Shown here one piece after another: positions 527 to 40,100 of a DNA stretch of 64,000 nucleotides. The translations under genes and the position numbers were made by a program. Numbering within the stretch: position 1 is the first letter of the stretch; each line of letters begins with the position of its first letter. A model generated the notes under the pieces. The model saw only the letters and a list, made by a program, of their open reading frames with translations, had not been told where the DNA came from and searched no databases. The DNA lies in the IMG/VR virus record IMGVR_UViG_3300009514_000001, positions 62,001 to 126,000 of that record. One strand, given 5' to 3'.

Positions 527-909
527 TCAGTCTCCAAAGAGGTCGAGTATGCCGCCCTCGGAGGGCGCTGTAGTCCGTTCATTCAACACGAAGAGCCGGT
601 CCAGCACTCCGTCCTCGAAATTCTGGTCGTGTTCGGTGTAGGGCGGGACGTCTAGGTCACCCCACCCGTAGGCTTTGAGGACCTCTCGGTCCATCTCTTC
701 GTGAAGCTGTTGGAGTTCGGGCAGCTCACCGGCCTTGATGGTGTTGTACAACTTCGTCAGGCCTTTCTGGTTCGAGGCCATCCACTTGGCCCGGGCCGCA
801 TAGAGACGCTGAGAACGGTGGAGCCCTGATGAATTGACCCTTCGTTGGCCTCTAGGGGCAAGGGGTCCGGACGCTCAGGACCTCGACGTAGACGGGAGTT
901 CAACGTCAT
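527..909 (-). pseudogene. Internally deleted, frameshifted paralogue of the MmeI-type TRD gene at 34551-35525
   Basis: ATG 909 reads MTLNSRLRRGPERPDPLPLEANEGSIHQGSTVL, matching the paralogue N-terminus. It then joins out of frame to QRLYAARAKWMASNQKGLTKLYN...GGILDLFGD, matching the paralogue C-terminus. Confidence 0.85.
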
Positions 910-7019: not shown

Positions 7020-7126
7020 GACCCACTCCAGGTCGACGTGACAGCCATCTCCTGGCCGTCAAACGTCGTTGTTGTCGGAGGGGCCGCCCCCAGCCTCCAT
7101 GCCTCATTGCAGTGTTCGCAGGTCAC
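7016..7126 (-). CDS. 36-aa CxxC micro-protein
   Basis: GTG at 7126 overlaps the helicase TGA, and its own TGA overlaps the ATG at 7019; reads MTCEHCNEAWRLG... Confidence 0.6.
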   Translation of the reverse strand: MTCEHCNEAWRLGAAPPTTTTFDGQEMAVTSTWSGS

Positions 7127-18337: not shown

Positions 18338-19144
18338 CTAGTCTCCGAACAGGTCCAGAATTCCGAAGGAGTCCTCCGGACGAGTCCGCGTCGACGGCAC
18401 ATGGGGAGCACGTCTCCCATAGGCGGTTAGGGCGTCTTTTTCGACGTCGAATCCGATGAATCTGCGCCCCAGACCCTCCGCAGCGACCAGGGTGGTCCCG
18501 CTGCCGGCAAAGGGGTCGACGACGATATCACCGGGATGACTCGCCTGTCGAATCATGACCTCCATCAGCTCAACCGGCTTCTGGGTCGGATAGAGATCGT
18601 CGCCTCGGGGGGCCTTGAAAGGGAGGACATCCCGCACACCTCTGTCCTCCGCCATAGGACGCTTGCCTTTCTCGGCGAAGAGAATCATCTCGTAGGACCC
18701 CCGGTACGGGTACCCCATGCCCATTGAGCCTTCGGAAAGGACGGCCCCTCCCATTGAACCACAGACAGAGCACTCGGTACCGCTCATCCTCCCAACCTTC
18801 TGCCAGATGAGAGGCTTGCGCAGCTCGAATCCCACCTCCAGAACCATCGGGACCATGGCCAAGAAGGCCTGGTACTCGCACATGATGTACAGGTGCGTCT
18901 TGTTCTTGAGGACCCGATAACACTCCCGAAGCACCTCTTCCAGGTACTCGGCCGGGACCACCGGGAACCACTTGTTCGAGCTTCCCTTCGACTCCTTCAG
19001 TCGGGTCGTCGTGCCCAGGGCCCGCCACTTCTCCATCGAGTCGTAGGCCGGGTCCATGAGGATGAGATCGACCACCCCGTCGTCCAGGGAGCGGAGACCC
19101 TCCAGGGCTCCTATGAGGTGCATTCGGTCCAGTTTGAGACTCAT
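18338..19144 (-). CDS. Beta-class N4-C/N6-A DNA methyltransferase
   Basis: Motif IV DPAY near the N-terminus; YPTQKPVEL; motif I DPFAGSGTT near the C-terminus; ends GILDLFGD. Confidence 0.9.
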   Translation of the reverse strand: MSLKLDRMHLIGALEGLRSLDDGVVDLILMDPAYDSMEKWRALGTTTRLKESKGSSNKWFPVVPAEYLEEVLRECYRVLKNKTHLYIMCEYQAFLAMVPMVLEVGFELRKPLIWQKVGRMSGTECSVCGSMGGAVLSEGSMGMGYPYRGSYEMILFAEKGKRPMAEDRGVRDVLPFKAPRGDDLYPTQKPVELMEVMIRQASHPGDIVVDPFAGSGTTLVAAEGLGRRFIGFDVEKDALTAYGRRAPHVPSTRTRPEDSFGILDLFGD

Positions 19145-21678: not shown

Positions 21679-21927
21679 CGTCTTCTCTCGTCTTGTCTAT
21701 CTTCTCATCGAGAACGCGCAGGTGTCTCTCTTGCCTGGCAAGGGACTTCTCCTGGGCCCTGAGGGCACCATTGTGCACCTTACCGAGGGTGGCGCGGATT
21801 CGTTCCACGCGCCTCTCGACGAGACGAGCCCCTCCCTGCACTCAGCGAGGTCACCTGGACACTCGGACGAAGGTCCAATACCCAGAGCGGCCTCCAAGAC
21901 AGCTAGGCGTCTTTGGGTGTCATCCAT
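21650..21927 (-). pseudogene. Small coiled-coil gene frameshifted by a 5-bp duplication
   Basis: ACGAG is doubled at 21819-21828; removing one copy fuses the two overlapping ORFs into a 90-aa ORF, MDDTQRRL...CREGLVERRVERIR... Confidence 0.6.
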
Positions 21928-26017: not shown

Positions 26018-26026
26018 ACACACCCC

Positions 26027-27054: not shown

Positions 27055-27679
27055 GGAATAGCTCGTTGTAGCGTTTCAGGAGACGCCCCTTGGCCTCCTT
27101 CCAGGGAAGCGGGACAATGTAGTCCGAGAACCACCCTGTGTGAATGTTGGTGGCGAACAAGCGCCCGTTGACGGGCCGAGGAAGAGGTTGTCCCCCCACT
27201 TCCTCGGGGAGGTCCCACGACTTCACCGGGTCCCTATCCCCGAAGAAGCTGTGAATCTCCAGAACCAAAGCCGCCAGGTCTGCCCACCGTACACTGGGAG
27301 GCATCTCCGGGACATCCGGGTCGAAGGGAATGCCCAGGGCGCTCCATATGGTCTGGGTGGTCTCCCACTCCACGTCGTCGAACCAAGTGATTCCGTCCTG
27401 TCTCATCCTGTGCTTGATGGGCTCTCCGAGGTCCCCCAGGTAGGCCTCGGCGAAGTCATGGGTGAGTCCTTTCCTGGCGTCCTCGGGGGCGCATAGCTGA
27501 CTCACCATGATACTGTGCTGGGCCACGGAGAAAGGCTCCGGGGTATGGCCGTTGTAGCGAGGCTGGGCGGACAGCGAGTGCACGATATCGAGGATGTGAA
27601 CGTCCTCTCGGGCGAGACGGTGGGGGTAGAGGAATCGGCGCTGGTAAGCGGTCTTGAGGCGTGGTTCTTTCTTTCTCAT
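27047..27679 (-). CDS. HD-domain nucleotidase, YfbR/YfdR-like
   Basis: RYNGH...FSVAQHS...LTHDFAEAYLGD; TGATG coupling to the DnaB gene. Confidence 0.85.
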   Translation of the reverse strand: MRKKEPRLKTAYQRRFLYPHRLAREDVHILDIVHSLSAQPRYNGHTPEPFSVAQHSIMVSQLCAPEDARKGLTHDFAEAYLGDLGEPIKHRMRQDGITWFDDVEWETTQTIWSALGIPFDPDVPEMPPSVRWADLAALVLEIHSFFGDRDPVKSWDLPEEVGGQPLPRPVNGRLFATNIHTGWFSDYIVPLPWKEAKGRLLKRYNELFHE

Positions 27680-30552
27680 CAGTCGTCGCTGCTCATGAAA
27701 TCGGTGGATAGTTCCTCGGCCTTGCGCACGGTCTCTTCGGCCTTCTCTGCGTTGGCCAGGGCCTCGAAGTCTACCGGGTCCGTGCAGGTCATGACGCGCC
27801 GACAACGCCAGTCAACGGCTGTGTAGAGAGGTTCGAACTTCTCGTCGTCTCTGGTCTTGATGCACTGGACTAGGAGACGATTGGTCTTCCGAAGGACATC
27901 ATTGATGAACCCGGCCGTGATGACGTCGCTGGAGCGTTCGATCTCGTTGGAGTAACTGAGGTCGTAGGCCTCATAGATGCCCACGCGGCCTCCGTTCTTG
28001 CCCATGTTGGCGCGCTTGAACCCCTCGCGGCTGATCTGGAACAGGGCCACGACGGCGATGCCTTCCCCTCGGTTGAAGTTGTTGGACAGAATCTTGAGAT
28101 CACGGACGACCTCATTGGCCCTGGCTGTCGTACTCGGGTTGTACTGCTTGGGGTCAACCAGGAGGACGTGGTCGACCACAATCATGTTGAACGGGCTCTG
28201 GCGATAGAGCAGCTCTGACTTGGACCGAATGTCGCTGACCCGGAAGCTGTCCTCATCCGGGTTGTACCCCACGAAGTGCATCTTGCCGTAGCCGTTGGCC
28301 GGGTCTTTCAGGTCTGGGAGGACGAACTGGGTGAGGAACTCCTCCTCGTTCGGCGGCAGACACCCATCCCGGAGGAAACGGTAACGAAGCCCCAGGTCAA
28401 CCTCTCCCTGTCTCTGGATGGCCAGACGGAGGCGAGCCTCCCGGAACTTCGGGTGCATCGAGTGCATCGCGATAATGATGCGACGACATTGGTCGTAGGA
28501 CATCTCCAGGGTGAAGTAGCAGGAGCTGTACTTGAACCAGATGGCCTGGTTGTAGACCCAGTTGAAGGCGACGCTGCTGTTGTGGACGATGAACCCATCC
28601 GCGACGAAGTTCTCGGGTCCCGGGACGGACAAATCGTAGGTCATCTCCTCCCCGTCGTAGGTGACCTCATCCACCTGGGTCCACCAGACGTCACCGTCGG
28701 CCTGCCGGAGCAGACCATCGTCCTGGGCCGCCTCTGCGAGACGACGAACCGTGTCCCGGTGAACTGACCGGCGCTCTTTCGCCCAACGCGCATATTGCCA
28801 ACCCCCCTTGCGAGTCTGGGTGCGGACGTCATCACCAAGGTGGGCCAGAAGGGCCGTGGGCATCTTGTCGTCTTCGGTGCGGTCAGGGAGGTGTCCGAGA
28901 GCTTCCTCCACAGCATCCTCCACAGCATCCTCCACAGCATCCTCCTTGCCGAAGATAGTAGACCGCGTAAGGAACCGGCGCTTCGACTCCGTGGTCCGAA
29001 CAGAGACGTTCCAAAAGACTCTCCTCTCCCCCTTGTACATAATCTGTACGGGGGAGAGAGTGGTCACTACCCCGACTCGTTGGAGGAGGAGTTGGATATC
29101 CGAGGCCAACTGACGGCTCTTACTCGTGTAGTAGATGTTGACCTGGTGGCGATCTTGCCGACCCTCACGTCGCCGGAACACGGACCCCACGGACCCGTCC
29201 GTCGACCACAAGGCCGAGAGAAACAGCCACGTCTGGTCGTCGGTCATCGACCACAACTCACCCGGGACGAACTTGTCCTCGGAACCCTTATCCCAGAGAC
29301 CAAGATCCTCAGCCAGGACACGAAGGGGGGAAGTCCATGGATGGTACTTACTTCGGCCAGTGGAAGTACTCAAATCAACCCTGTCCGAACGCTCTCGGAA
29401 ATAAGCATATCGAGCCTTCCCTCCCTCCGGGGCACGCCTATACCCCATCCTGCGAAGACGGGCGATGAAGTCGGAGCGGATGCCTGGATTCGATACGGAT
29501 AGTTGCAGACACTCCCTCAGGCAGCCGTCCCCCAGGAGATATCCGAGACACACCACTTGGTCGTCACTCCACTCAGAGTCCTCGGGGGAAGTGGTCATGT
29601 GCTTGGCCAAACCCACCCAAGAGCCCTTCTGAAGACCATCCGCACGCACCCAACCTCCGGGGGTGAGGAACGGATGGTTCTCCGACACACGGATGGTGTG
29701 GCCTGTCTTGGTTCGCACCTTGAGGATGGGCTTGACTCCGTTCTTCGCCACCCTACTCGTGCGGGTCTCCGCCAGCTTGACAGAGCCCTCGTCGAGGGCA
29801 TGGAGCCGCGCGCAACGACGGCTCTTGTAAAGATCACCTATCGTTTTCAATTCTCCTGTGTAAGTGTCGAATATCTTTACGGAATTCGCGACGCATTTTA
29901 AGTGACCTGTAAAGCCAGCATGGGTCCAGAGCTGCTTCTTGCGGGCACCGCCGAGGGCGACGTCAATCTGCTTGATGCCCATGTACTGGCCGATACCGAA
30001 GTTGGGGTCATCGCGCCGTCGTTTGTAATCCTCCCAGTAGTCTTCGGTGTCCTCAGTGACCTCGCCGTCTGTGCGCATCCCACCTGGTGGGCGACCGATG
30101 AGGGAGGCCTCCCGCTGGAAGTAGGAAATGGCGTCACGAGGGCCCTTGAAGATGCGGTCCTTCCCGTCCTTCCCTGGGAGCTTGAGGCCCTGCATATTGA
30201 TGTGGTTGGCGTTTTGGAGACGCTCCTGGAGCTTGGCCTGGAGTCTCTCCTCTGAGCGTTCGTAGAGGCGGGCTCGGAAGTCGCCCCGGAACAGGGGTCG
30301 GAGCTGTTTGAGAATCTCAAGCTGGTCTACGATGTCGCTCTGCTTCTCCCGACGGAAGTGAGAGGTCAGGGTCGTGACGTCGGGGGCATGGTTGTGGGCA
30401 CGGAAGAACTCTCTAACGTACTCCCAGATGGTCTGGTGCTCTGGGATGAGGAACTCAAGGCCCTCGGCCTGGGTGTCCAGGATGTTGGCCAGGAGGAGAT
30501 CAGGGTCATCGGTATGGTCGACCCTGAACATGGACCGCAACAAAATCTTCAT
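27679..30552 (-). CDS. dnaB: DnaB-like replicative helicase with intein
   Basis: GFTGHLK|SS, YFTLEMS, IVVDH, LFQISR, IERSSDVI. Confidence 0.88.
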   Translation of the reverse strand: MKILLRSMFRVDHTDDPDLLLANILDTQAEGLEFLIPEHQTIWEYVREFFRAHNHAPDVTTLTSHFRREKQSDIVDQLEILKQLRPLFRGDFRARLYERSEERLQAKLQERLQNANHINMQGLKLPGKDGKDRIFKGPRDAISYFQREASLIGRPPGGMRTDGEVTEDTEDYWEDYKRRRDDPNFGIGQYMGIKQIDVALGGARKKQLWTHAGFTGHLKCVANSVKIFDTYTGELKTIGDLYKSRRCARLHALDEGSVKLAETRTSRVAKNGVKPILKVRTKTGHTIRVSENHPFLTPGGWVRADGLQKGSWVGLAKHMTTSPEDSEWSDDQVVCLGYLLGDGCLRECLQLSVSNPGIRSDFIARLRRMGYRRAPEGGKARYAYFRERSDRVDLSTSTGRSKYHPWTSPLRVLAEDLGLWDKGSEDKFVPGELWSMTDDQTWLFLSALWSTDGSVGSVFRRREGRQDRHQVNIYYTSKSRQLASDIQLLLQRVGVVTTLSPVQIMYKGERRVFWNVSVRTTESKRRFLTRSTIFGKEDAVEDAVEDAVEEALGHLPDRTEDDKMPTALLAHLGDDVRTQTRKGGWQYARWAKERRSVHRDTVRRLAEAAQDDGLLRQADGDVWWTQVDEVTYDGEEMTYDLSVPGPENFVADGFIVHNSSVAFNWVYNQAIWFKYSSCYFTLEMSYDQCRRIIIAMHSMHPKFREARLRLAIQRQGEVDLGLRYRFLRDGCLPPNEEEFLTQFVLPDLKDPANGYGKMHFVGYNPDEDSFRVSDIRSKSELLYRQSPFNMIVVDHVLLVDPKQYNPSTTARANEVVRDLKILSNNFNRGEGIAVVALFQISREGFKRANMGKNGGRVGIYEAYDLSYSNEIERSSDVITAGFINDVLRKTNRLLVQCIKTRDDEKFEPLYTAVDWRCRRVMTCTDPVDFEALANAEKAEETVRKAEELSTDFMSSDD
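28579..29895 (-). mobile_element. Intein after the DnaB Walker A lysine, 439 aa, LAGLIDADG type
   Basis: CVANS...IVHN|S; LGYLLGDG and FLSALWSTDG. Confidence 0.95.
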
Positions 30553-30567
30553 GAATGAGGCGCTCCG

Positions 30568-31506
30568 TTAGCTTCCTTGCTTCTTGCTCTTCTTCTTGGC
30601 CTTCTTTTTCTTCCACTCCTTCTCTGGGTCCCGATGAACCCGAAGTGAAGACTTCCGACTCTCTTTCACGAGGCCAGTCTTCGAGGGCAACTCCTGGTCG
30701 AACCCGACGGTCCCTGAGGTGACCGGAGACGGCATGTCGGGGTAGTCGGTCTCGCGGTCGTCACCCAGATCGATTCCGACGTACTCCCACATCTCGATGT
30801 GGTCCATCAGGTGGTCGGAGTAGCACAGATGGCCGGGAGCTAGGGGGGTGTGGGGCTGGTCGAAGAGCCAGGTGGGCTTGCCCTCGTGGAACCGGCTGCT
30901 CAGAGCCTCCCCCAACACCCCGGGCATCTCCTTGTTGTTCGCCGCCTTCATCCCCAGATGGATGATGAGCAGCTCTGGAGGAATCACCAGGTCCTGGAGG
31001 GTGTAGAAGGACATGGAGACCGGAGCGGCGTCCGAATCAAAAATCTCGCCACCCCCCAGAGGAACGGTCGCCAACCAGGCGGTTATCAGGTCAGTGTCGC
31101 TAGCGACCTTGAAAAACCACCGGCTCCCTTTGCGAATGGCGACATGACGGAGGTGCTCTCGGAACACCCTCGTCGGCGCCGTCACCCACACGTTCTTGTC
31201 GGTCAGGTCCCGCAAAGGCGAGGACTCGATGTTGGCGGCCCGACTCAGACCACGCCACCCGGCCTCGACGTTGTCGAGGATGTCCCGTGCGGCCATGCAC
31301 TCACAGCGCATCCGTCCTGGGGGAATGGTGGAGTCGTCTTGAACGAACCCGTGACCGAAACATTGGGGGCAGTTGGGGTCCCCGGGACCCGTGTCGTCGA
31401 CCTTCTCCCGATAGTCAGGGTGGTTGAGTCCTGACGTCTCTGCATCGAAAGCCACTCGACGTCTTTTGTAGTTGGAGCCGTAGCCGTCGTGGTCGTCGTC
31501 CTTCAC
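30568..31506 (-). CDS. DnaC/IstB-like helicase-loader homologue with degenerate ATPase motifs
   Basis: N-terminal CPQC...CEC; ELLIIHLG, SRFHEGKPTWL; lies directly upstream of dnaB. Confidence 0.65.
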   Translation of the reverse strand: MKDDDHDGYGSNYKRRRVAFDAETSGLNHPDYREKVDDTGPGDPNCPQCFGHGFVQDDSTIPPGRMRCECMAARDILDNVEAGWRGLSRAANIESSPLRDLTDKNVWVTAPTRVFREHLRHVAIRKGSRWFFKVASDTDLITAWLATVPLGGGEIFDSDAAPVSMSFYTLQDLVIPPELLIIHLGMKAANNKEMPGVLGEALSSRFHEGKPTWLFDQPHTPLAPGHLCYSDHLMDHIEMWEYVGIDLGDDRETDYPDMPSPVTSGTVGFDQELPSKTGLVKESRKSSLRVHRDPEKEWKKKKAKKKSKKQGS

Positions 31507-34500
31507 TTCTTCCTCCTTGATTTCCGCGCGTCCTCCAGAACGCCCTCGTAGATGGCCTTGAGGTCTCCGTCTGCGCTAATAGTGACTGGCTTGGACTCGC
31601 CCTTGATGCGCCGGCCGAGGACAGCTTCCACCAAATCCATCTTCTTGCGCAAGACCTGATTGACACGCATGTCGATGGAGCCGATGCCGCACAGGTGGAT
31701 GGCATAGACCCGGTCGTGCTGACTGCCGATGCGGACCATCCGCCCCAGGAGCTGGAGGTAGTCACCGGCGCTCCAGGGGGTGTCGTAGCAGATGAGGCCC
31801 TTGGCGGCTTGGAGGTTGATGGCGTCCGATCCCGCCGTCGTAATGACGATGACCTTGGTGTCTGAGTTGGGGTCCTGGAAGAGACGCTGCGCCTCTGCGC
31901 GCCTCTTCGGATTGCTGTCGTGCCCCGTGATACTCACCGCGTAGCGGTTCTTCCGCCGCTCGTCAGTGTTGTTGAGCGCGGGCATGATGAGCTTAACCAT
32001 CTCGGCGAACCGGGTGAACACGATGACCTTCTCATCGGCCAGGTCGCCCTCTGACAAGAGGTCCTTGAGGAGGCTGAACTTCTTGGACTTGCCATCCCTC
32101 CCCAACAGCTCTGGGTGGTTGACAATCTGCTGGAGGCGCGTACACGCCGTGAGGTGGTCGACCTCCTTCTGCTCCATCTCCCCCGTCTCTTTGTCCTGGA
32201 CCCAGAGGAGGCCGGAGAGGGCTTCGCTGTACAGACGAGTCTGGTCGCCGTGCATCGAGAACTTGAGCATCCGGAAGGTCACGTTCGGAAGCTCTGTCGC
32301 GACCTCGTGCTTGGGCCGCCCCAGGAAGAACGGGTCTATCACCCGCCGGAACCTCTCGATGTCCTCGTCCCGGTATCCGATGATGACCGGAATCTGTCGG
32401 CCGCTCTTGGGGAGCTTCTGCAAGCGGGTGATGCAGTAGTCCTTCATGAAAGAGGTCTTCGTCCCAAACAGCGGAGGCATGACGACCTTGTAGATGCCAT
32501 AGCCCTCGATGAGGTTGTTCTTGATGAGAGTCGCTGTCAGACCCCAAACCCAGGCAACCCCTTCCTTTTGGGCCAGGGCCTTGCAGACCTGGTGGATACG
32601 GGCTCTCGGATTCTTGAACGCAGTTGCCTCGTCGTAGACGACGACCCTGAAGTCGAGTTCACCGTGGATTTTAGTAAAGTCTGCCCTCGCCAGGGCATAG
32701 TTCATGACGATGACTGCCGGTCCTTTCTCGGCGAGAAACTCAGCGTATTGCTTCTCCCTCTTCTTCGGATTTCCTCCGGTCATCGCTGTGACGTGCACCC
32801 CTGTGGTGAACTTCTGAAACTCGCCGGCCCACTGGGGGACGGCTGACTTCGTCGTCAGGATGAGCGCCTTCTGGTCTGGGTTGGTCCTCCAGAGGACACA
32901 GAGGGAGGCGATGGTACTGAGCGTGTTGTGGTTGACAACCCCATTTCCGACATAGCAATGAGACGGGTCGTCGACTGTGATGTCGTACACCTCGGCCTCT
33001 CCCCTCTCGATATTCCTCACAGGATCGTAGAACCACTCTCTCTGACGAACCCGACTCAACTCTAGGAGGGAGGGGGAGTCTTGTGGCACTCCCACCTCTA
33101 ACGCAACCCCCAACATGGTATCGAGGAACGAATAGGAGACATTACGGCGCCCTGCCCGGACATGTCCAAGGGTGGTATAGAAAGCATTCCCGAATCTCTT
33201 CGAAGTGCCTCCCCCCTTGTACCCCTGACGTCCACAACGAGCGTAAATCTCCTCCCGCAAGGCCTCCACCTCTGGCTTGAGATGGGGGACTACATCGTGG
33301 TTGGTGTTCTCCTTGTGCTGTGTCAGGGGAAGGATGGCGTCCCGCTTGCGTTGAGAGATGAGACCCACGTGCTCCATGAACACTCGGGCGTCCTCCCCCA
33401 GGATTGTCAGCCTCCAGTAGGTGTGGTCTCGCCCCTTAACCGCCTTCGGAGACCTACGGGACACAACCCCAAACCCCAGAAGGACAATCTGGAGCTGTTT
33501 GGCCAATTTCTCCGAGGCAGAACTGAACTCGATACCGTTCTTGGTAACGTGGCTCTCCGCATCCACTAAAGCCCGTACAAACTGACGCACGCACTCCCGG
33601 TCTGCCCGAAGGACCGACCACGGGATACACTTGTCTTTGGCGACTCCTTTGGGGACACCTATCGCCTCCAGCCACCGAATCAGATAGGTGCTGGCTATGG
33701 GATAATCGTTCCCATGTTTTCGTACGGGATATTTGAACAGAGTGTCAATGAGGTATTCGATGTCCGCACTGGTCTCAGGATTACTAAGGGAGCACTGGCT
33801 GATAGTAAAAAACCTTCCATCCTTGTGGTTAAACCACCCCTCTCCATCCTTGTGGTTAAACCACCCCTCTGCGATCAGATACCCCAGGAACCTGGCCAGC
33901 TCTGGAACCATCTTGAACTGGGTGGGGTACGTTTTCTCCCCATTCCGAGCGACCTCAGAGGGGAGGGACACGGGGACCCTTCCAAACTTGTAAGGGCTCC
34001 GATCAATGCAAAGGTAGTCCCCCTCACGAACCTCTGCGAGCTTAACCCAGACCTCACCTCCGCCACGACGAACCCGGACCGGGTGGACGAGAGACCCTTC
34101 GATCTCAAAGCCGTGATGCGTCTGGACTTTCCGGGTAGGCTTCACACCTCCATGGTAGAACTGTGAGACCTGGAGTTCCTTCCCCCCGACCTGAACGCTC
34201 CAATGATCCACGGGAGCAAAGGTGTCTGGTTTCGTGATCCCTGGGTTGATATCCTCGATAGGGACCAACCCATTCGACCCCGTTCGAATCAGGGTGTCTC
34301 CTCTGGTGCACTTACCTAATCCGGTGTCGTCGCCCAGGATGAACCGCCCCATGGAAGCCATGTGCAGGATGCCGATGACCTGGTAGTCCCGAATCTTGAG
34401 GGGGCGCTCCACCCCATCGAACCCGACGAAGGTCTCCCGGAGGTTCGGCGGCTTCCTCTTGATGGCCAGGCCCTTCTTCTTCCGAATGGCCGAGAGGCGC

Positions 34501-34544
34501 TTGTACCTCTTCTCGGTCGTCGGGTTCATCTTGTACTTGCTCAT
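31503..34544 (-). CDS. SNF2-family helicase with intein
   Basis: DDTGLGK|T, YDEAT, LTATLIKNN, AGSDAINLQAA, WS...Y.Q..GR..RIG. Confidence 0.93.
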   Translation of the reverse strand: MSKYKMNPTTEKRYKRLSAIRKKKGLAIKRKPPNLRETFVGFDGVERPLKIRDYQVIGILHMASMGRFILGDDTGLGKCTRGDTLIRTGSNGLVPIEDINPGITKPDTFAPVDHWSVQVGGKELQVSQFYHGGVKPTRKVQTHHGFEIEGSLVHPVRVRRGGGEVWVKLAEVREGDYLCIDRSPYKFGRVPVSLPSEVARNGEKTYPTQFKMVPELARFLGYLIAEGWFNHKDGEGWFNHKDGRFFTISQCSLSNPETSADIEYLIDTLFKYPVRKHGNDYPIASTYLIRWLEAIGVPKGVAKDKCIPWSVLRADRECVRQFVRALVDAESHVTKNGIEFSSASEKLAKQLQIVLLGFGVVSRRSPKAVKGRDHTYWRLTILGEDARVFMEHVGLISQRKRDAILPLTQHKENTNHDVVPHLKPEVEALREEIYARCGRQGYKGGGTSKRFGNAFYTTLGHVRAGRRNVSYSFLDTMLGVALEVGVPQDSPSLLELSRVRQREWFYDPVRNIERGEAEVYDITVDDPSHCYVGNGVVNHNTLSTIASLCVLWRTNPDQKALILTTKSAVPQWAGEFQKFTTGVHVTAMTGGNPKKREKQYAEFLAEKGPAVIVMNYALARADFTKIHGELDFRVVVYDEATAFKNPRARIHQVCKALAQKEGVAWVWGLTATLIKNNLIEGYGIYKVVMPPLFGTKTSFMKDYCITRLQKLPKSGRQIPVIIGYRDEDIERFRRVIDPFFLGRPKHEVATELPNVTFRMLKFSMHGDQTRLYSEALSGLLWVQDKETGEMEQKEVDHLTACTRLQQIVNHPELLGRDGKSKKFSLLKDLLSEGDLADEKVIVFTRFAEMVKLIMPALNNTDERRKNRYAVSITGHDSNPKRRAEAQRLFQDPNSDTKVIVITTAGSDAINLQAAKGLICYDTPWSAGDYLQLLGRMVRIGSQHDRVYAIHLCGIGSIDMRVNQVLRKKMDLVEAVLGRRIKGESKPVTISADGDLKAIYEGVLEDARKSRRKK
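32925..34310 (-). mobile_element. Intein after the SNF2 motif I lysine, 462 aa, LAGLIDADG type
   Basis: CTRGD...VNHN|T; FLGYLIAEG and FVRALVDAES. Confidence 0.95.
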
Positions 34545-34550
34545 CGTCTT

Positions 34551-35525
34551 CTAGTCTCCAAAGAGGTCGAGGATACCGCCCTCAGAGGGCGCTGTGGAGC
34601 GCTCTTCGTTCAAGACGAACAACCGGTCGAGGAGTTCGTCCTCGAAGTCCTGGTCGTGTCCAGCATAGTTCGGGACGTCAAGGTCGCTCCATCCGTAGCT
34701 TCTGAGGACCTCTCGGTCCATCTCTTCGTGGAGCTGTTGAAGTTCGGGTAGCTCACCGGCCTTGATAGCGTTGTAGAGCTTCGTCAGGCCTTTCTGGTTC
34801 TCGGTCATCCACTCGGCTCGGGCGGCATAGAGCCGCTGTCCGATGCCTTCCAGAGAGAGGACGACCTCTTTGGGGTCCTTTTGGGGAAAGGGGAACGTCT
34901 CAAAACACGTCTCCGCCGTATAGCGGGAAGTTCCTTGAAGAGAAGAGCCCATGATGCGAGCCCAGTACTCGTGAACTCTAGACTGGAGAACTGAAAACGC
35001 AGTCCAGGACTCCAGAGGGAACACGTAGAGTGCTTCAGAGAACACTCGTCCCGTCGGCTGGAAGGAGAACATCACATGCTTCGACACCCGACCCGTCACC
35101 AAACAACGATGGAAGGGGGCGAGGGAACGATAGAGCCCGGGACGTGGGTCTGAGTACTGCCACCAACGCTTGCAGCGAGCGTTTGTCCTCTCCCTTTCTG
35201 GTTTGACCAGCCTGCGAACCCTCTCAAGCAGGTCGGGCCACTGTTCGGCATCCTCCAATGACATCTGGTCGAAATTGATGACGTATCGGTAGAAATCTTG
35301 GGTAGGAGAGGAGTTGACCTCCTTCCCGCCGATGTAGGGGAAAATCCTTTCTCCGTTCTTCGGGTCCTTGTCGATGAGGGCATTTCGCTCCCTTGGGGTC
35401 AATGTGAACCCGTCCACATTCAGGACGAAGGAGCCGTTGAAACTCAGACCCTCATTGGCCTTGAGAGGCAACGGGTCTGGACGCTCCGGACGCTGACGTA
35501 GACGAGAGTTCAGGCCCGGGCTCAT
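34551..35525 (-). CDS. Stand-alone MmeI/Type IIL-like target-recognition and C-terminal domain protein
   Basis: PYIGGKEVNSSP...RYVINF...WWQY...VSKH..F...LQSRVHE.WA...SS....RYT...CFETFPFP...GLTKLYN; no methyltransferase or nuclease motifs. Confidence 0.85.
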   Translation of the reverse strand: MSPGLNSRLRQRPERPDPLPLKANEGLSFNGSFVLNVDGFTLTPRERNALIDKDPKNGERIFPYIGGKEVNSSPTQDFYRYVINFDQMSLEDAEQWPDLLERVRRLVKPERERTNARCKRWWQYSDPRPGLYRSLAPFHRCLVTGRVSKHVMFSFQPTGRVFSEALYVFPLESWTAFSVLQSRVHEYWARIMGSSLQGTSRYTAETCFETFPFPQKDPKEVVLSLEGIGQRLYAARAEWMTENQKGLTKLYNAIKAGELPELQQLHEEMDREVLRSYGWSDLDVPNYAGHDQDFEDELLDRLFVLNEERSTAPSEGGILDLFGD

Positions 35526-36070
35526 TCAGGCGGCTCCTCGTAGAACGGACACTCTTCCCCGCCGGCACAGTCTCCCGTCGTGTCCCCACAGTAGAGACAG
35601 ACCCCCGGGTCCGGGTCTTCCGCCCTGGGCTTTGGAGTCCGGTCCCCCGAGGAAGCGACGAACACCCCCTCCGAGAGCATCCTCTTGAGTTTGGCGAGAG
35701 TGAGGTCCTGCATCGCGGCCAAGCTGTCCGCCTGTTCCTGGGTGATGTACTTGTCCTTGACGTACAGCTCCAGGCGCTGATGGACCGTCGCCGCCTCCTC
35801 GGGAGACACGACGACCTCCCCACCATCCTCGACACTTTCCTCGGCCTCCTCGGGCGAGAGGGTGTACTGGACCACAATCATCACCTCTGGTTGACCCTCG
35901 AAAGAGAAGTGAACCACGTCGCGGACCATCCAGAAGCGTTCCCTCAAAGAGACCTTCTCCCCAATGCGGGGCACTGGTGGCTGCTCTCCAAAGAGGAACG
36001 CTTTGGACTCGAACCAGTCGCCAGCGTCGGCTCCGTGGTAGAAGTTGTAGTGGATTCGTCGCTTAGCCAT
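35522..36070 (-). CDS. Hypothetical protein, 182 aa
   Basis: Coupled ORF with C-terminal CLYC...C....C. Confidence 0.7.
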   Translation of the reverse strand: MAKRRIHYNFYHGADAGDWFESKAFLFGEQPPVPRIGEKVSLRERFWMVRDVVHFSFEGQPEVMIVVQYTLSPEEAEESVEDGGEVVVSPEEAATVHQRLELYVKDKYITQEQADSLAAMQDLTLAKLKRMLSEGVFVASSGDRTPKPRAEDPDPGVCLYCGDTTGDCAGGEECPFYEEPPE

Positions 36071-36890
36071 CGATATCTCCCCCGACATCGACTACGACGC
36101 GTCCCGGGCCATCGATGACCAGTCCGACCCCGTGAGGGGTGCCCAAGGTCTTGACACCTCCGTGGGCTTCGATGGAGACCTGGCGACCTGGTATAACCAC
36201 GTGACCATGGACCCTGCTCAGACGGCGAGGAACCCCCGTAGAGTACTCTGAGAGTGCCTCTGCAATCTGCTCCAGCGTCATCCCCTTGAGACCTGCCTCC
36301 TGGACAGCAGCGGCCGTCCTGGGGCCGATGTAGCCGTCAACGGGACCAGGGTTGCGGCCGATCCTGTGGAGCTGGGCCTGGACGAACCTCTCCAGAGATC
36401 GGGTCCCCTCCCACTTGCCGACGTCAGCCTGGGCCGCAGCGACCACTGAGAGTTTGGCGACCTCTCCCCTCCCCTCTGCGATGAGACGCTCGTAGAGGAC
36501 CTGCCAGGGGCCGTAGTAATAGAACACGGTCTGGAAGGGAGATGGAAGCGGGTCCCGGTCGTGGGGAACGAAGTTCAGGGGAACGACCACTGACCAGAGG
36601 AGGCCGAGCTTGCGGACGTCAACCACCTCCTCCTCGAACACTGACTCGAACCGGACCTGTCGACCGGCCCGCAACATCGAGAGGTGGGTGGGAAAGGGGT
36701 CCTCGTCCGGGGCTGAGATGTCGATCTTGAATCCCAGGTCCTTCGTCGCTTCGATGACCCGGTCCAGGGCTTGGGCAGTGTCCCTGGTCACGACCAAGCG
36801 GCCGTACCTAATGAGTGTCTCGCGTTGCACAGAGTCCTCCAGGGTCGTCAGATAGAGATACGACACGGGACCAGAAACTGGACCCCCCAA
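36063..36890 (-). CDS. Peptidoglycan-binding protein with a possible degenerate M15 peptidase domain
   Basis: FVQAQLHRIGRNPGPVDGYIGPRTAAAV resembles PG_binding_1; exact start uncertain. Confidence 0.7.
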   Translation of the reverse strand: MGGPVSGPVSYLYLTTLEDSVQRETLIRYGRLVVTRDTAQALDRVIEATKDLGFKIDISAPDEDPFPTHLSMLRAGRQVRFESVFEEEVVDVRKLGLLWSVVVPLNFVPHDRDPLPSPFQTVFYYYGPWQVLYERLIAEGRGEVAKLSVVAAAQADVGKWEGTRSLERFVQAQLHRIGRNPGPVDGYIGPRTAAAVQEAGLKGMTLEQIAEALSEYSTGVPRRLSRVHGHVVIPGRQVSIEAHGGVKTLGTPHGVGLVIDGPGRVVVDVGGDIDG

Positions 36891-37138: not shown

Positions 37139-40100
37139 TTACGGGTCGTTGCCGGGGAATACGGCCAGGGTCACCGAAGACGGGTCAGGAGTAGCTCGAC
37201 TGAAGCCCGTGAACATCGGCTTGCCTTCACAGCGGTACCGGTCCGCCGCCGCGTACCCTTCACCATACCCCGTCGGTCCGATGACGCCATCGAGCTGGAT
37301 GCCGTTGGTCTGACCCAGGCCATCTCCGAGGATGCCGTAGGTCAGGACAACCATCTGAATCTCGTCCCCGTGGCTCGTCGTGTTGACGGTCGCGAAGGCC
37401 TCCTCCTTGTAGTTGCGTACAAGCATGGCCTTGCAAGCCAGGATGCCTCCCTTGAGGACAGGGAGAACTGACGCCGGGAAGGACTCGCTGACCCAGTCGA
37501 TGGGGCCACCAGGGTTCTGTCCAGAGAGGACGAAAGACGAGCCGCCGCCTCGGTACAAGCGGAACCGCTTGGTTCCCGTCGGGGCCGTGGATGCGTTGAA
37601 CGCCTCATAGCGAAGGATGGCACCGTCGCTCATCGCGACGAGCTGCCCCGGGTCGCCCATGAACCGGTCGAAGCTGTCGCCGCCAGTAGTCAGAGGGAGG
37701 ACCGTCTGCACCGGCCTGAGGCGAGGAGTCGCTGTCGCGAACGCGCTGGCCTGGTCGTTGAGGGGGTTCTCCCCGATGAAGTCCGAGTCCTGGAGCAGGA
37801 TGCCCAGGGGCAGACGCTCCGTCATACCCGTGAGCTGGAGCTGGCTGGTGCCGTCTCCGGCATTGTTGACCAGGTCCCTGCCCCCCGCGAAATTGGCTCG
37901 GGTGACCCGTGAGTTCTTCGGCTCGTTGAAGGGACCGACGTTGTCGAACGGAACCGCCAACGTGAGGGAGCGGTCGCTTCCTGTCCCCGGCGTCCACGAG
38001 ACCTCAATGCCGTTGCCCCGGCTGCCATCCACCAGGGAAGTGAGGATGACGTTGTTGCCCTCCGCGTTGGCGTTCAGGGTGAAGCGAAGGTCAGGGTGGG
38101 CGCTAAGGACGGCAGCCAGATCTGCTGTCGTCGCCTCTCGATCTGCCGGAATCTCTCGGAACTCGGTGATGGTCGCAGGAGTCGTAGACACCCCCGTGAA
38201 TGTAACGACGGTGCCGTCCAACTTGTGGATGGTGATTGTCGCTCCGATGAGGGAGAGATCCTCGCCGCCTTGGAGGGTGGCCCCCGAGACCACGAGCTGG
38301 GCTGTCGAACTCACCAGGGTCACCGCATTGCCGACAGCTCCAGGGGCAAAGGCCGTTAGGATGACGACATCCCCGTTTCTCGTTGCGGTCACGGTTCCCG
38401 TGAATGAATTGGCTCCGTCGTTGAGGGCGGCCACGATGTCGGCCGCCGCGGTTGCCCCGCCGCCCGTCACATCGAAATCATCAGAACCCGGAGTCCTGGA
38501 GCCGGCAACGCCGGTCAGGGGGACACCACCAATCGTGAGGATGTCGCCGGGAAGAGGCGCCAGAACCTGGACGGTACCGGTCGCCTTGATGTCACCAGGC
38601 GAGGCCACTGCGAGGGCCAGACCACCCCGGTCTACGCCCTCCTTCTGCCCCTCAGTGAAAGTCCTGGTCAGGACCCTGTTACTGGGGGTCGTCTGGCTCG
38701 GCGGGAGGCGGGAGGACGCGCTGACAGTGTCCTCCGTGTAGCCGGCGTCGAGAGGCGTTCCGGGGAACAGCTCGCCACCGACCTTGCCAGTGCCCAAGGT
38801 CGTGAAGAAGTCGATACTCGCCAGAACTTCGAAGGCCCTGGGGTTCGGGGTCTCGACCTGGAGGTCGCCGTTGGAGTCGAACTGCTCGATGGGCTCGTTC
38901 AGGAAGAACGCATCAGAGGTGGCGACCTGTCCGTAACGGGCCTCATAGTCCGAGGTCGTCCTCGTTGAACCCTCGCGGGACATGAAGGGGTCACCCTGGT
39001 ACGGCGTCCGGTTGAACCCGGCGTACCAGCGGTCGTTGAGCTGTGCCGCCGAGGGGACGGTCATCTGAATCAGCTCCAGCTCGGGGTTGGAACCGTCCAG
39101 GACCAGAGCACCCGTGCCCGTGTGGCGTCGAGCGATGACGTAGTTGTTCTCGTTGATGAACCCCTGGGCGAACCCGAACACGGCCGCCTCGACCACGTAC
39201 TCGAAGTCCGTGAACTGGTCCTTCGAGCCCGAGACGAAGTTGGGGCTCAGGGAGACATCAAGGGCCTCCTGAGGGATGATGTAGGTGTGGTCACCGTCCG
39301 TCAGGGTGAGGTCCTTGGCGCCGTCCTGGAGCACGAACAGCGTCTGCTGCTCCGCGTCCGTCTTGAGGAGGTTTGTCGGCGGGTCCGCCACTGCCGTCAC
39401 ACGGTCAGCCCCGAAGGTCAGACCGCCCTTGGCGATGAAGTCGTCGCGGTCGTAAACCCCGTAGAGACGGGCAATGCCAAGGTATGGCGGAAGCTGGATA
39501 CCAACGAGACCCGCACCAAGGTCCGAAGACTGAACTGAGGCCAGACGGGCCGTGATATCCGCCGCCTCCGAGGTCAGGGTGCCGACAGTGGTAGTCAGAC
39601 GAGCCTGGTAGGCCGCCGTGCCCGGACCGACGATGGTCCCGTAGACGGAGTAGGCGTGTCCACTGGTCGTTCCCGTCTGGAGGTAGAGAGGAAGGACCAG
39701 GTTGCCGGCACTGGTGTTGTCCTGACCACCGATGGCGCTGAACACCGGCAACGTCGGGTCGACGGCGTCAGTGAACAGGTGGTTGATGCCGTTGAGGAAC
39801 GTGCCCGAGCCGACGCCGGTGATGTCGACATGGAAGGGGATGTCCTGGCGGCCGAACCGGGGCATATACTCCGAAGGCACCGGGAAGCCCATCTTGAGGC
39901 CGGTGGTGAGGATGCCCGCACCGTCCTTAGGGATGGCGCCCGGATAGGTCGTGCTGCCCAAGAGACTCGGGTCGGCCTCCGTGGTGATGGCTTTGAGGGT
40001 CATCGACTGGTCCTGGAACGGACGAATGACCAGGGTCTTCGACCCCTTGTCGACGAAGACCTCGTGCTCGCGGTCCTGCTCGCTGAAGGCTACGACGTTG

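What the first reader, a model, noticed from the sequence alone, without database searches (positions are those of the whole stretch)
34551..35525. MmeI/Type IIL target-recognition domain encoded alone, directly upstream of a SNF2 helicase in the replication operon
Seen: the 324-aa ORF matches only the C-terminal part of Type IIL/IIG enzymes, has no FxGxG, NPPF or nuclease motif, and stops 6 nt before the SNF2 start. Known: in these enzymes the TRD is normally fused to the MTase. Inference: it may be a sequence-specific DNA binder that masks host restriction sites, supplies specificity in trans, or recruits the SNF2 translocase.
Basis: partly seen in the sequence, partly recalled or inferred. 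Interest (0 to 1): 0.6.

Follow-up and report, generated by a model that had tools for sequence, protein, structure and literature searches.

The report
Orphan DISARM-methylase recognition module, jumbo phage
A 222-kb phage carries, wedged into its replication operon, an intact gene for only the DNA-reading end of a bacterial defence methylase (DISARM DrmMI / MmeI type) although no matching methylase exists anywhere in its genome; it may be a decoy against that defence, or the last survivor of a split phage methylase.

Summary
Window 34551..35525 (-) is an intact 324-aa ORF consisting only of an MmeI-type target-recognition domain plus the C-terminal helical bundle. It ends 6 nt before an intein-bearing SNF2 gene.

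More precisely, it is the C-terminal ~320 aa of DrmMI, the class 1 DISARM adenine methylase (PADLOC E 8e-90, profile 997-1315 of 1347). Its closest cellular relatives are full-length DrmMI proteins in Myxococcota DrmD-DrmMI-DrmA-DrmB operons.

Stand-alone copies are common in other phages. There they follow a separate 200-300-aa catalytic methylase, sometimes as three tandem TRDs. A methylase domain lies just upstream in 88 of 89 comparator loci. This phage has none in 222 kb.

The SNF2 link is not conserved. Four related phages keep the flanking genes but lack the TRD, so it is an insertion into a variable slot.

The genome also holds two wrecked paralogues. The intact copy keeps 57 of 59 family-invariant residues, and dN/dS against the paralogues is 0.16.

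All three copies keep an identical ...ILDLF tail that resembles the Q-x-x-L-F ends of bacterial DrmMI, a possible clamp-binding motif.

Best reading (about 0.35): a catalytically inert competitor of DrmMI-type recognition. Main rival (about 0.3): a functionless relic.

The parts
34551..35525 (-). Intact 324-aa gene (P0001): an orphan DrmMI/MmeI-family specificity module with no catalytic domain.
   Evidence: ORF. Pfam MmeI_TRD E 7e-16. PADLOC DrmMI PDLC02643 E 8e-90, profile 997-1315 of 1347. phrog_25988 E 1e-79, profile 991-1310 of 1429.
35436..35525 (-). Residues 1-30: the conserved N-terminal linker (..NSRL..PER.DP..). Stand-alone TRD genes of other phages and of split bacterial loci start with the same segment.
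   Evidence: Alignment A1. All three copies in this genome keep it.
34881..35435 (-). Residues 31-215: the TRD proper. Positions aligned to the MmeI base-reading residues are G145/E164, A165/R201 and Q197/T199, and these columns vary across the family.
   Evidence: Pfam envelope. Alignment to MmeI. MmeI contact residues from PMC4833311. Variable columns in A1.
34596..34880 (-). Residues 216-310: the C-terminal helical bundle, equivalent to MmeI 826-919 and to the end of DrmMI.
   Evidence: AF2 helices 223-310 with pLDDT 80-98. The phmmer alignment reaches MmeI residue 883. The DrmMI profile is matched to position 1315 of 1347.
34554..34595 (-). Residues 311-324: a disordered tail ending ..GGILDLFGD. 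It is a candidate short linear motif that resembles the beta-clamp-binding consensus Q-phi-x-L-F.
   Evidence: Low pLDDT at 317-324. The last 11 residues are identical in all three phage copies despite dS of 0.6-0.85. Q-x-x-L-F ends occur in bacterial DrmMI. Consensus. Binding itself is untested.
31503..34544 (-). SNF2-family helicase of 1013 aa. It is a conserved replication-module gene, not a DrmD orthologue.
   Evidence: Pfam. PADLOC best hits are DpdE/ZorD, with DrmD only weak. Orthologues at 51-84% identity sit in related phages that have no TRD beside them.
32925..34310 (-). LAGLIDADG intein (residues 79-540) inserted in the SNF2 P-loop (GLGK|C...HN|T).
   Evidence: Intein_splicing, LAGLIDADG_3 and intein_Cterm hits. 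Sequence. L116 has the same SNF2 without the intein.
35522..36088 (-). Upstream 188-aa gene (P0123). It is acidic with a C-terminal Cys cluster. It is a resident gene of this phage group, not a methylase and not co-inserted with the TRD.
   Evidence: No family hits. Homologues at 74% and 46% identity lie directly upstream of the SNF2 slot in L116 and L117. hhalign against the small-methylase profile gives probability 0.2%.
36063..36890 (-). Conserved 275-aa gene with a PG_binding_1-like segment. It is the left anchor of the syntenic block.
   Evidence: 40% identity to the L114 258-aa gene, E 6e-62. Pfam.
30568..31506 (-). Conserved 312-aa gene downstream of the SNF2. It is the right anchor of the syntenic block.
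   Evidence: 40% identity to the L114 309-aa gene, E 6e-53.
527..909 (-). Copy 3 of the TRD gene, a pseudogene. The N-terminal linker is joined to the C-terminal bundle and tail, the central TRD is deleted, and there is a frameshift.
   Evidence: blastn 84% identity to 34553-34838. Translations. Coordinates. Copy 2 lies just outside the window at genome 59633-60722.

Best explanation
Identity (near certain). The gene encodes only the specificity end of a DrmMI/MmeI-family N6-adenine methylase. It has the linker, the TRD, the C-terminal helical bundle and a short tail.

It sits as a lineage-specific insertion in a variable slot between a conserved 188-aa gene and the SNF2 helicase of a 222-kb phage. 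Its nearest cellular relatives are Myxococcota DISARM class 1 methylases. The phage has no catalytic partner for it.

Mechanism (inferred; about one in three). The protein is made together with the replication genes. It folds as an autonomous module, as the naturally split versions show it can.

It then acts without catalysis as a competitor of the host's DrmMI-type recognition. Either it occupies the asymmetric motif that DrmMI reads on unmethylated phage DNA, or it takes the place of the host TRD (and possibly its tail-docking site) in the defence complex. In either case DISARM or Type IIG-like sensing of the replicating phage genome is blunted.

What is shown: the domain content, the absence of a methylase, the insertion, purifying selection and the conserved tail. 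What is inferred: DNA binding, competition with the host and any clamp contact.
For: Domain identity.

Closest relatives are full-length DrmMI in verified DrmD-DrmMI-DrmA-DrmB operons of Myxococcus xanthus and Sorangium.

The module is a natural autonomous unit. It is a separate ORF with the same N-terminal boundary in a split bacterial DISARM locus (L004) and in phages.

No methylase partner exists. Pfam MmeI_Mtase, Eco57I and N6_Mtase give nothing. A custom HMM, phmmer and a motif scan of all frames give nothing. tblastn for remnants gives nothing. By contrast, a methylase domain lies upstream in 88 of 89 comparator loci.

Constraint is maintained. The copy departs from only 2 of 59 otherwise invariant columns, and family members range 0-5. 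dN/dS is 0.16 against copy 2 (213 codons, dS 0.85) and 0.165 against copy 3 (93 codons).

None of the three dispersed copies has a methylase neighbour. This suggests the TRD-only unit was duplicated as such.

The tail ..SEGGILDLFGD is identical in all three copies. It resembles the Q-x-x-L-F ends of bacterial DrmMI and is absent from phage TRDs that sit behind a methylase.

The gene is tightly embedded in the operon, with an ATGA overlap upstream, a 6-nt spacer downstream, and no promoter or terminator signal above chance.

In class 1 DISARM, unmethylated DrmMI sites enhance restriction (bioRxiv 10.1101/2021.12.28.474362). That gives a site- or partner-competitor something to block.
Against: No experiment or read data bears on DNA binding or on defence.

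In MmeI the DNA is clamped between the TRD and the methylase domain. A lone TRD may therefore bind DNA weakly.

Keeping all family-invariant residues is what one expects of a module that still docks a methylase, or of one that was orphaned only recently. A protein with a new job might show some relaxed positions.

The low dN/dS may date from a time when a methylase was still present, or from donor lineages.

This genome visibly tolerates dead TRD copies.

The host is only inferred from the nearest homologues.

The tail lacks the glutamine at position 1, which is important for clamp binding.

I found no anti-DISARM protein of this kind in the literature searches.
Confidence: 0.35

Rival explanations
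1. Relic. The gene is the last intact member of a former phage 'small methylase + TRD array' module, or of a captured DrmMI fragment, whose catalytic part has been lost. It has no present function and will decay as copies 2 and 3 have.
For: Every other phage context examined pairs the TRD with an adjacent small methylase. This genome has none.

The same genome has two wrecked paralogues. One has its central segment inverted in place and a frameshifted 3' end. The other has the TRD deleted.

The inverted, clearly dead central segment of copy 2 is still an open frame of 216 codons. Intactness alone is therefore weak evidence of function.

A 222-kb phage can carry ballast.
Against: The ORF is fully intact, with only 2 of 59 invariant positions changed. 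dN/dS is 0.16.

Start and stop are precisely embedded in a replication operon.

The three copies sit in three separate intergenic slots, each without a methylase. This suggests the methylase-less unit itself was propagated.

The tail is perfectly conserved in all copies.
Confidence: 0.3
2. Trans-acting specificity subunit. The protein docks onto a catalytic subunit supplied from outside the phage genome. That could be the N-terminal part of a host split DrmMI, or the small methylase of a resident prophage. It would direct or redirect m6A methylation so that phage DNA is marked as self, or host specificity is scrambled.
For: Split architectures with the same domain boundary exist in bacteria. 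L004 has a 1020-aa DrmMI N-part plus a 328-aa TRD inside a DISARM operon. About 12 of 79 GTDB loci have short frames.

Split architectures also exist in phages, with 1-3 TRDs behind a 200-300-aa methylase that carries motif I and NPPY/F/W.

P0001 keeps essentially all residues invariant in methylase-coupled TRDs, including the N-terminal linker.
Against: The nearest Myxococcota DrmMI are mostly single polypeptides with their own TRD in cis.

No partner can be named. No docking was tested.
Confidence: 0.15
3. SNF2 targeting factor (one of the first reader's ideas). The TRD binds specific sites and recruits or regulates the adjacent SNF2 translocase during replication.
For: The two genes are adjacent with a 6-nt spacer.

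DISARM class 1 pairs an SNF2 (DrmD) with DrmMI, and natural SNF2-DrmMI fusions are reported (PMC9881135).

One PADLOC 'DrmD' model (PDLC02626) matches residues 168-285 of the TRD.
Against: Orthologous SNF2 genes in L116 (82-84% identity), L117 (68%), and L114 and L115 (51-53%) have no TRD beside them. The two records that could be searched whole have none anywhere.

The slot holds an unrelated 124-aa ORF in L116 and nothing in L117.

The SNF2 scores as DpdE/ZorD/phage helicase, not DrmD.

TRD homologues in other phages are not SNF2-adjacent.
Confidence: 0.07

Closest known systems
DrmMI, the N6-adenine methylase of class 1 DISARM (Ofir et al. 2018; Aparicio-Maldonado et al., bioRxiv 10.1101/2021.12.28.474362)
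   Same: It is the best profile match: PDLC02643, E 8e-90, over the last ~320 positions. Identity is 45-55% to the C-termini of Myxococcota DrmMI that sit in DrmD-DrmMI-DrmA-DrmB operons. The C-terminal hydrophobic tail is of a similar type.
   Different: It lacks the ~1000 N-terminal residues, including the methylase domain. There are no DrmA, DrmB or DrmC genes. The neighbouring SNF2 is not DrmD-like. It is encoded by a phage.
MmeI (Type IIL) TRD and C-terminal helical bundle, PDB 5HR4 (PMC4833311)
   Same: Pfam MmeI_TRD hit. phmmer E 7e-12 to residues 650-883. Foldseek E 5e-10 with TMq 0.60. The family is variable at the positions that read bases 3, 4 and 6 in MmeI.
   Different: About 20% identity. 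There is no endonuclease, spacer or methylase domain. In MmeI the DNA is held between the TRD and the methylase, and the methylase is missing here.
Split phage modules: a small gamma-class methylase (200-300 aa) followed by one to three separate ~325-aa TRD genes (L112/L113, L003, L110, L111, L108). I found no published description.
   Same: The TRD family is the same at 50-57% identity. The ORF size is the same, as is the N-terminal boundary and the overlapping start and stop codons.
   Different: Those TRDs always follow a methylase ORF with motif I and NPP(Y/F/W). This one follows an unrelated 188-aa gene, and the genome has no such methylase. Those TRDs lack the ..LDLF tail.
Type I HsdS specificity subunits (separate S subunit serving HsdM)
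   Same: It works like one at the family level. A separately encoded DNA-recognition subunit is translationally coupled to the methylase gene, and specificities can be exchanged.
   Different: It has a single TRD rather than two TRDs with coiled-coil spacers. It is a different Pfam family. Here there is no M subunit at all. Membership was not tested beyond Pfam, which gave no HsdS hit.
Extra or silent TRD cassettes next to DrmMI, PglX and Type IIG genes that are swapped by programmed inversion (Milman et al. 2023, PMC9881135)
   Same: There are several partial TRD copies in one genome. Copy 2 has exactly its central TRD segment (residues 31-245) inverted between the conserved ends.
   Different: The copies are dispersed over 37 kb rather than clustered with an active methylase gene. 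The junctions show only about 5 nt of microhomology and no inverted repeats. No invertase was seen nearby. The other copies are frameshifted wrecks.

Membership tests
MmeI_TRD domain family (PF20466) | Match to the family HMM above the curated cut-off | tested here: met
   58.6 bits against a cut-off of 27, E 7e-16, residues 31-215 matching profile 23-206 of 207.
MmeI_TRD domain family (PF20466) | TRD fold followed by a C-terminal helical bundle, as in MmeI | tested here: met
   The AF2 model (pLDDT 71, pTM 0.72) gives a Foldseek top hit to 5hr4, E 4.8e-10, TMq 0.60. Caveat: residues 60-130 are of low confidence.
Type IIL / IIG restriction-modification enzyme (MmeI family) | N-terminal PD-(D/E)XK endonuclease domain | tested here: not met
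   There is no such domain. The ORF begins at the linker that precedes the TRD.
Type IIL / IIG restriction-modification enzyme (MmeI family) | Gamma-class N6-adenine methylase domain with motif I and NPP(Y/F/W) | tested here: not met
   It is absent from the ORF and from the whole 222-kb genome.
Class 1 DISARM DrmMI | Full-length match to DrmMI models | tested here: not met
   Only profile positions 997-1315 of 1347 are covered.
Class 1 DISARM DrmMI | Operon with DrmD (SNF2), DrmA, DrmB (DUF1998) and DrmC (PLD) | tested here: not met
   Neighbours are phage replication genes. The SNF2 scores best as DpdE/ZorD, and no DrmA, DrmB or DrmC hits were found among the neighbours scanned. True operons for comparison: L047, L037 and L004.
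Split phage methylase + TRD module (defined here) | TRD as its own ORF starting at the conserved ..NSRL..PER.DP.. linker | tested here: met
   Alignment A1.
Split phage methylase + TRD module (defined here) | Small gamma-class methylase ORF immediately upstream | tested here: not met
   The upstream ORF P0123 is unrelated to the methylase profile (hhalign probability 0.2%). It is a resident gene of related phages. Census: 88 of 89 other loci have the methylase.
Beta-clamp-binding proteins (pentapeptide Q-phi-x-L-F in a disordered terminus) | Consensus motif at a disordered C-terminus | tested here: inconclusive
   The tail is ..ILDLFGD. Positions 2-5 fit QL[S/D]LF, but position 1 is Ile rather than Gln. 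The tail has low pLDDT. Bacterial DrmMI ends show Q-x-x-L-F in 10 of 77 rows by the strict pattern and 24 of 77 by the loose pattern.
Beta-clamp-binding proteins (pentapeptide Q-phi-x-L-F in a disordered terminus) | Physical binding to DnaN | not testable with these tools
   The one complex job gave 'no answer' and must not be counted either way. The phage encodes no DnaN-type clamp.

The most novel reading that the evidence does not exclude
The phage has turned the sensor end of its host's own defence methylase against the defence. A truncated DrmMI (TRD, helical bundle and clamp-type tail) is expressed with the replication genes. It acts as a dominant-negative or decoy that occupies DrmMI motifs, or the docking sites of DrmMI (possibly the host sliding clamp). 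That would make it the first anti-DISARM protein, and an example of anti-defence by a stolen specificity module. As a corollary, bacterial DrmMI would be a clamp-tethered methylase.
Probability: 0.2. Interest if true: 0.8.

Novelty: new variant of a known kind. Interest (0 to 1): 0.55.

Why it matters
Three points would interest people who work on phage-defence conflicts.

1. I found no phage inhibitor of DISARM described in the literature searched. A methylase-less copy of the DISARM specificity module, kept under purifying selection in a phage replication operon, is a concrete and cheap candidate to test.

2. The comparison set shows that phages commonly carry this family as a two-part enzyme. 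A minimal catalytic subunit is followed by one to three exchangeable TRD subunits. This is a Type-I-like 'M + S' design for an MmeI/DrmMI-type methylase. It would let one catalytic core protect phage DNA against several motif-specific defences. I found no description of it.

3. Many bacterial DrmMI proteins end in a Lys-rich linker followed by Q-x-x-L-F. If that is a sliding-clamp motif, it would link DISARM self-marking to the replication fork.

If the gene is instead a relic, the locus is still a clear snapshot of how such modules are broken up and lost.

Tried and rejected
**Complex prediction**
- I first tried four times to submit P0001 with the two SNF2 exteins. The machine was busy and nothing ran.
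- The one job that ran was the Myxococcus xanthus DnaN dimer with P0001 residues 281-324. It returned 'no answer'. It is no evidence for or against clamp binding.

**Reads**
I therefore have no expression data, no methylation data and no test of whether copy 2 flips.

**Searches for near relatives**
- Megablast of the locus against GenBank phages gave no match.
- The single-sequence scan of IMG/VR found nothing. The alignment-based scan was needed.

**Is the SNF2 a DrmD?** Rejected. Its best PADLOC and NCBIfam hits are DpdE, ZorD and a pilus-regulating Snf2. DrmD hits are only weak and partial.

**Is the upstream 188-aa ORF, or the 228-aa ORF upstream of copy 3, a cryptic methylase?** Rejected. 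P0123 also has homologues in TRD-less relatives.

**Is the L108 phage a second methylase-less case?** No. Its '120-aa ORF' is the front of a small methylase that is interrupted by an in-frame TGA.

**Programmed inversion at copy 2?** Only microhomology is present at the junctions, and the other parts are frameshifted. No recombinase was seen among the neighbours.

**Origin: host capture or phage lineage?** Unresolved.
- The quick tree puts P0001 weakly beside a Myxococcota DrmMI.
- A tree that holds it together with six phage split-type TRDs is not rejected and had the higher likelihood (p-AU 0.99).

**Uninformative checks**
- GC and GC3 of the gene against the genome and against possible donors.
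- The promoter and terminator scan, which found nothing above chance.

**Other methylases.** The phage does encode an N6_N4 (beta-class) methylase and a weak D12-class hit. These are self-contained families with no known use for an MmeI-type TRD.

**Not used.** I did not use the large representative-protein search, because the family was not left open.
Full report
**1. What is there**

The window is bases 62001-126000 of a 222,005-bp virus record with direct terminal repeats and 60% G+C.

On the minus strand, 34551..35525 is an ATG-started ORF of 324 codons. Its start overlaps the stop of a 188-aa ORF (ATGA). Its TAG lies 6 nt before the ATG of a 1013-aa SNF2 helicase.

That helicase is interrupted in its P-loop by a LAGLIDADG intein. 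Further downstream on the same strand lie:
- a conserved 312-aa gene;
- an intein-bearing DnaB;
- a dNMP phosphatase;
- a primase Zn-ribbon protein;
- an intein-bearing family A polymerase.

No promoter-like or terminator-like signal exceeds chance across 30-43.5 kb.

**2. What the protein is**

Sequence and fold evidence:
- Pfam sees only MmeI_TRD (E 7e-16, residues 31-215).
- phmmer against PDB sequences aligns residues 38-280 to MmeI 650-883.
- By the published domain map, MmeI has its methylase at 301-620, its TRD at 621-825 and its helical bundle at 826-919 (PMC4833311). The aligned region is therefore the TRD plus the start of the C-terminal bundle.
- An AF2 model built on 20 homologues (pLDDT 71, pTM 0.72) finds MmeI first (Foldseek E 5e-10). 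The DNA-recognition ends of CamA, M.BseCI and BREX PglX follow.

The sharpest assignment comes from PADLOC. The DISARM class 1 methylase model DrmMI PDLC02643 matches at E 8e-90 over profile positions 997-1315 of 1347. In PHROGs, phrog_25988 matches at positions 991-1310 of 1429. The ORF is therefore the C-terminal fifth to quarter of a DrmMI-type protein, and nothing else.

**3. Relatives in cells**

A pattern scan of one genome per GTDB species returned 79 loci.
- The best matches (45-55% identity) are Myxococcota: Polyangiaceae, Sorangium, Myxococcus and Archangium.
- In 59 of the 79 loci the match is the end of an open frame extending 640-1550 residues further upstream.
- In 12 loci the frame opens less than 240 residues upstream (split or frameshifted).
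- 6 loci are cut by contig ends and 2 are intermediate.

For M. xanthus AM003 and Sorangium So ce375, I confirmed with PADLOC that the surrounding genes are DrmD, DrmMI, DrmA and DrmB.

One bacterial contig (L004) carries a DISARM operon in which DrmMI is naturally split. It has a 1020-aa methylase part and a 328-aa TRD gene.

**4. Relatives in phages**

The word-index search gave 743 hits. Many are ~300-345 aa proteins. I looked up six phage or phage-like contexts.

| Locus | Catalytic gene upstream | TRD genes |
|---|---|---|
| L112/L113 | 202-aa methylase | three tandem TRDs of 325, 329 and 323 aa |
| L003 (327-kb contig) | 300-aa methylase | three TRDs |
| L110 | 225-aa methylase | one TRD |
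| L111 (P2-like) | 223-aa methylase | one TRD |
| L108/L109 | small methylase interrupted by an in-frame TGA | one TRD |

The small proteins carry motif I (D-x-x-x-G-x-G-x-L) and NPP(Y/W/F). The TRD genes start at a shared linker (..NSRL..PER.DP..) and overlap the preceding gene.

An HMM of the small methylases finds a methylase domain just upstream of the TRD in 88 of 89 comparator loci. At family level, then, the TRD is an autonomous subunit that serves a separately encoded catalytic subunit, much as HsdS serves HsdM. That is an inference from gene order, and no assay was done. I found no paper describing the arrangement.

**5. What is odd here**

This phage has no partner.
- Pfam MmeI_Mtase, Eco57I and N6_Mtase give no match in the whole genome.
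- The custom HMM, phmmer and a motif scan of all 3132 stop-to-stop frames give none.
- tblastn with small methylases and three DrmMI N-parts finds no remnant.
- The upstream 188-aa protein is not a methylase.

The only DNA methylases present are an unrelated beta-class N6_N4 enzyme (window 18338..19144) and a weak D12-class hit.

**6. The SNF2 link is accidental**

Related phages keep the block '275-aa gene, 188-aa gene, SNF2, 312-aa gene, DnaB', but without the TRD.
- In L117 (SNF2 68% identical, same intein site), the 188-aa homologue abuts the SNF2.
- In L116 (SNF2 82-84% identical, no intein), an unrelated 124-aa ORF fills the slot.
- In L114 and L115 (51-53%), a different 177-179-aa ORF precedes the SNF2. 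No TRD exists anywhere in those two records.

The TRD is thus an insertion into a variable slot. The SNF2 itself resembles DpdE, ZorD and phage helicases rather than DrmD.

**7. Paralogues and selection**

blastn of the gene against its own genome finds two more copies.

Copy 2 (genome 59633-60722, just left of the window):
- It has the N-terminal linker repeated three times.
- Its central segment (nt 91-735, residues 31-245) is inverted in place.
- Its 3' end is frameshifted.

Copy 3 (window 527-909):
- It joins the linker to the C-terminal bundle.
- The TRD is deleted and there is a frameshift.

Both are dead. Each sits in its own intergenic slot with no methylase beside it.

Divergence is old and was constrained.
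- Copy 1 against the copy 2 centre: 80% amino-acid identity, dS 0.85, dN 0.13, dN/dS 0.16.
- Copy 1 against the copy 3 end: dN/dS 0.165.

The intact copy departs from only 2 of 59 columns that are invariant in the other 19 aligned proteins. That is within the family range of 0-5. By the alignment to MmeI, the residues at its base-reading positions fall in variable columns of the family. Copies 1 and 2 differ at two of them.

These data argue against relaxed selection. They cannot say whether the constraint acted after the methylase was lost.

**8. The tail**

All three copies end in the identical 11 residues ..SEGGILDLFGD. In the model this part is disordered.

- Phage TRDs that sit behind a methylase stop right after the last helix and lack such a tail.
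- Many bacterial DrmMI continue into a Lys/Arg-rich linker and end in Q-x-x-L-F. This holds for 10 of 77 rows by the strict pattern and 24 of 77 by the loose pattern. A different short motif occurs in cyanobacteria.

This resembles the bacterial sliding-clamp-binding consensus Q-phi-x-L-F / QL[S/D]LF. The phage tail fits positions 2-5 but has Ile in place of the important Gln. The phage has no DnaN-type clamp. This remains a sequence-level lead only.

**9. Origin**

The protein lies in a well-supported clade (SH-aLRT 99) of Myxococcota DrmMI together with phage and metagenome stand-alone TRDs. Its place inside that clade is unresolved. A tree that forces it together with six phage split-type TRDs is not rejected. 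The tail favours a bacterial DrmMI source, while the clean ORF boundary fits either source. Composition is uninformative. A Myxococcota host is suggested only by these nearest homologues.

**10. Mechanism**

Class 1 DISARM methylates an asymmetric motif with DrmMI, and unmethylated sites enhance restriction.

I rank the readings as follows.
- **(a) Catalytically inert competitor (about 0.35).** It competes with DrmMI-type recognition, either for the DNA motif or for the docking sites of the host module.
- **(b) Functionless relic (about 0.3).** It is left over from a lost methylase module.
- **(c) Specificity subunit for an outside catalytic core (about 0.15).** The core would come from outside the phage genome.
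- **(d) SNF2 targeting factor (about 0.07).**

The evidence does not separate (a) from (b) well. Constraint, operon embedding, propagation of the methylase-less unit and the conserved tail favour (a). The universal methylase pairing elsewhere, the two dead paralogues and the need for a methylase domain to clamp DNA in MmeI favour (b).

**11. Limits**

There are no reads and no usable complex prediction. The host is not known. The middle of the structural model is weak. The census of phage contexts rests on six look-ups plus 24 IMG/VR loci.

Noticed in passing
own genome 59633-60722 (about 1.3-2.4 kb left of the window start; L002:1252-2341, L118:5633-6722): Copy 2 of the TRD gene. The N-terminal linker is triplicated in tandem. 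The central 645 nt (residues 31-245) are inverted in place and are still an open frame. The 3' end has several frameshifts and a small duplication. The junctions show only about 5 nt of microhomology.
   Followed up: yes
window 527-909 (-): Copy 3 of the TRD gene. The linker is joined to the C-terminal bundle, the whole TRD is deleted and there is a frameshift. Its tail ..SEGGILDLFGD is identical to that of copy 1.
   Followed up: yes
L030, L034, L039, L083, L088, L094, L004 and others (C-termini of bacterial DrmMI): Many full-length DISARM DrmMI proteins end in a Lys/Arg-rich, probably disordered linker followed by Q-x-x-L-F. Examples are QGSLF, QGELF and QMSLF. This looks like a sliding-clamp-binding motif. 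Cyanobacterial ones end in a different (T/S)(I/L)P(G/D)(F/L) motif. I found no paper linking DrmMI to the clamp.
   Followed up: partly
L112:2927-6451, L113, L003:7139-10993, L110:7381-9026, L111:6922-8545: Phages encode this methylase family as a split enzyme. A 200-300-aa catalytic ORF is followed by one or three tandem ~325-aa TRD ORFs with overlapping stops and starts. This suggests one catalytic core with several exchangeable specificities.
   Followed up: partly
L108:4493-5110 (same in L109): The small methylase upstream of a phage TRD carries an in-frame TGA exactly where homologues have a conserved Trp. It is either a nonsense mutation or a hint of TGA read as Trp in that phage. I did not pursue it.
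   Followed up: no
window 32925-34310 (SNF2), within 27679-30552 (DnaB) and within 21920-26023 (PolA): Three replication genes each carry a LAGLIDADG-type intein. The SNF2 intein sits in the P-loop. A relative (L117) has it at the same site, and a closer relative (L116) lacks it.
   Followed up: partly
window 43854-55223, 37139-42967 and 7123-14358 (-): Giant ORFs of 3789, 1942 and 2411 aa. The 1942-aa ORF had no Pfam, PHROG or PADLOC hit when scanned. The other two were not scanned. L116 has ORFs of matching size (3801 and 1951 aa) in the same order.
   Followed up: no
window 18338-19144 (-); own genome about 30.4 kb: The phage does encode other DNA methylases. One is a beta-class N6_N4_Mtase (E 8e-35). 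The other is a weak D12-class match. Both are unrelated to the TRD family.
   Followed up: partly
L116:10540-10914; L114:5188-5721; L115:2701-3240: The slot just upstream of the SNF2 gene is a hot spot for accessory genes in this phage group. It holds an unrelated 124-aa ORF in L116. In L114 and L115 it holds 177-179-aa ORFs that show no similarity to this phage's 188-aa protein. In this phage it holds the TRD.
   Followed up: partly
PADLOC model PDLC02626 ('DrmD', 276 positions): This 'DrmD' model matches the TRD and bundle region of P0001 (residues 168-285) and of true DrmMI proteins. It probably derives from fused or mis-split genes and could mislabel TRD fragments as DrmD.
   Followed up: no
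whole record G000: CheckV rates the 222-kb record 42% complete although it has direct terminal repeats. The relatives L114 and L115 are rated 17% and 10% at 89 and 55 kb. The reference genomes of this group may therefore be much larger, or the estimate may be off.
   Followed up: no
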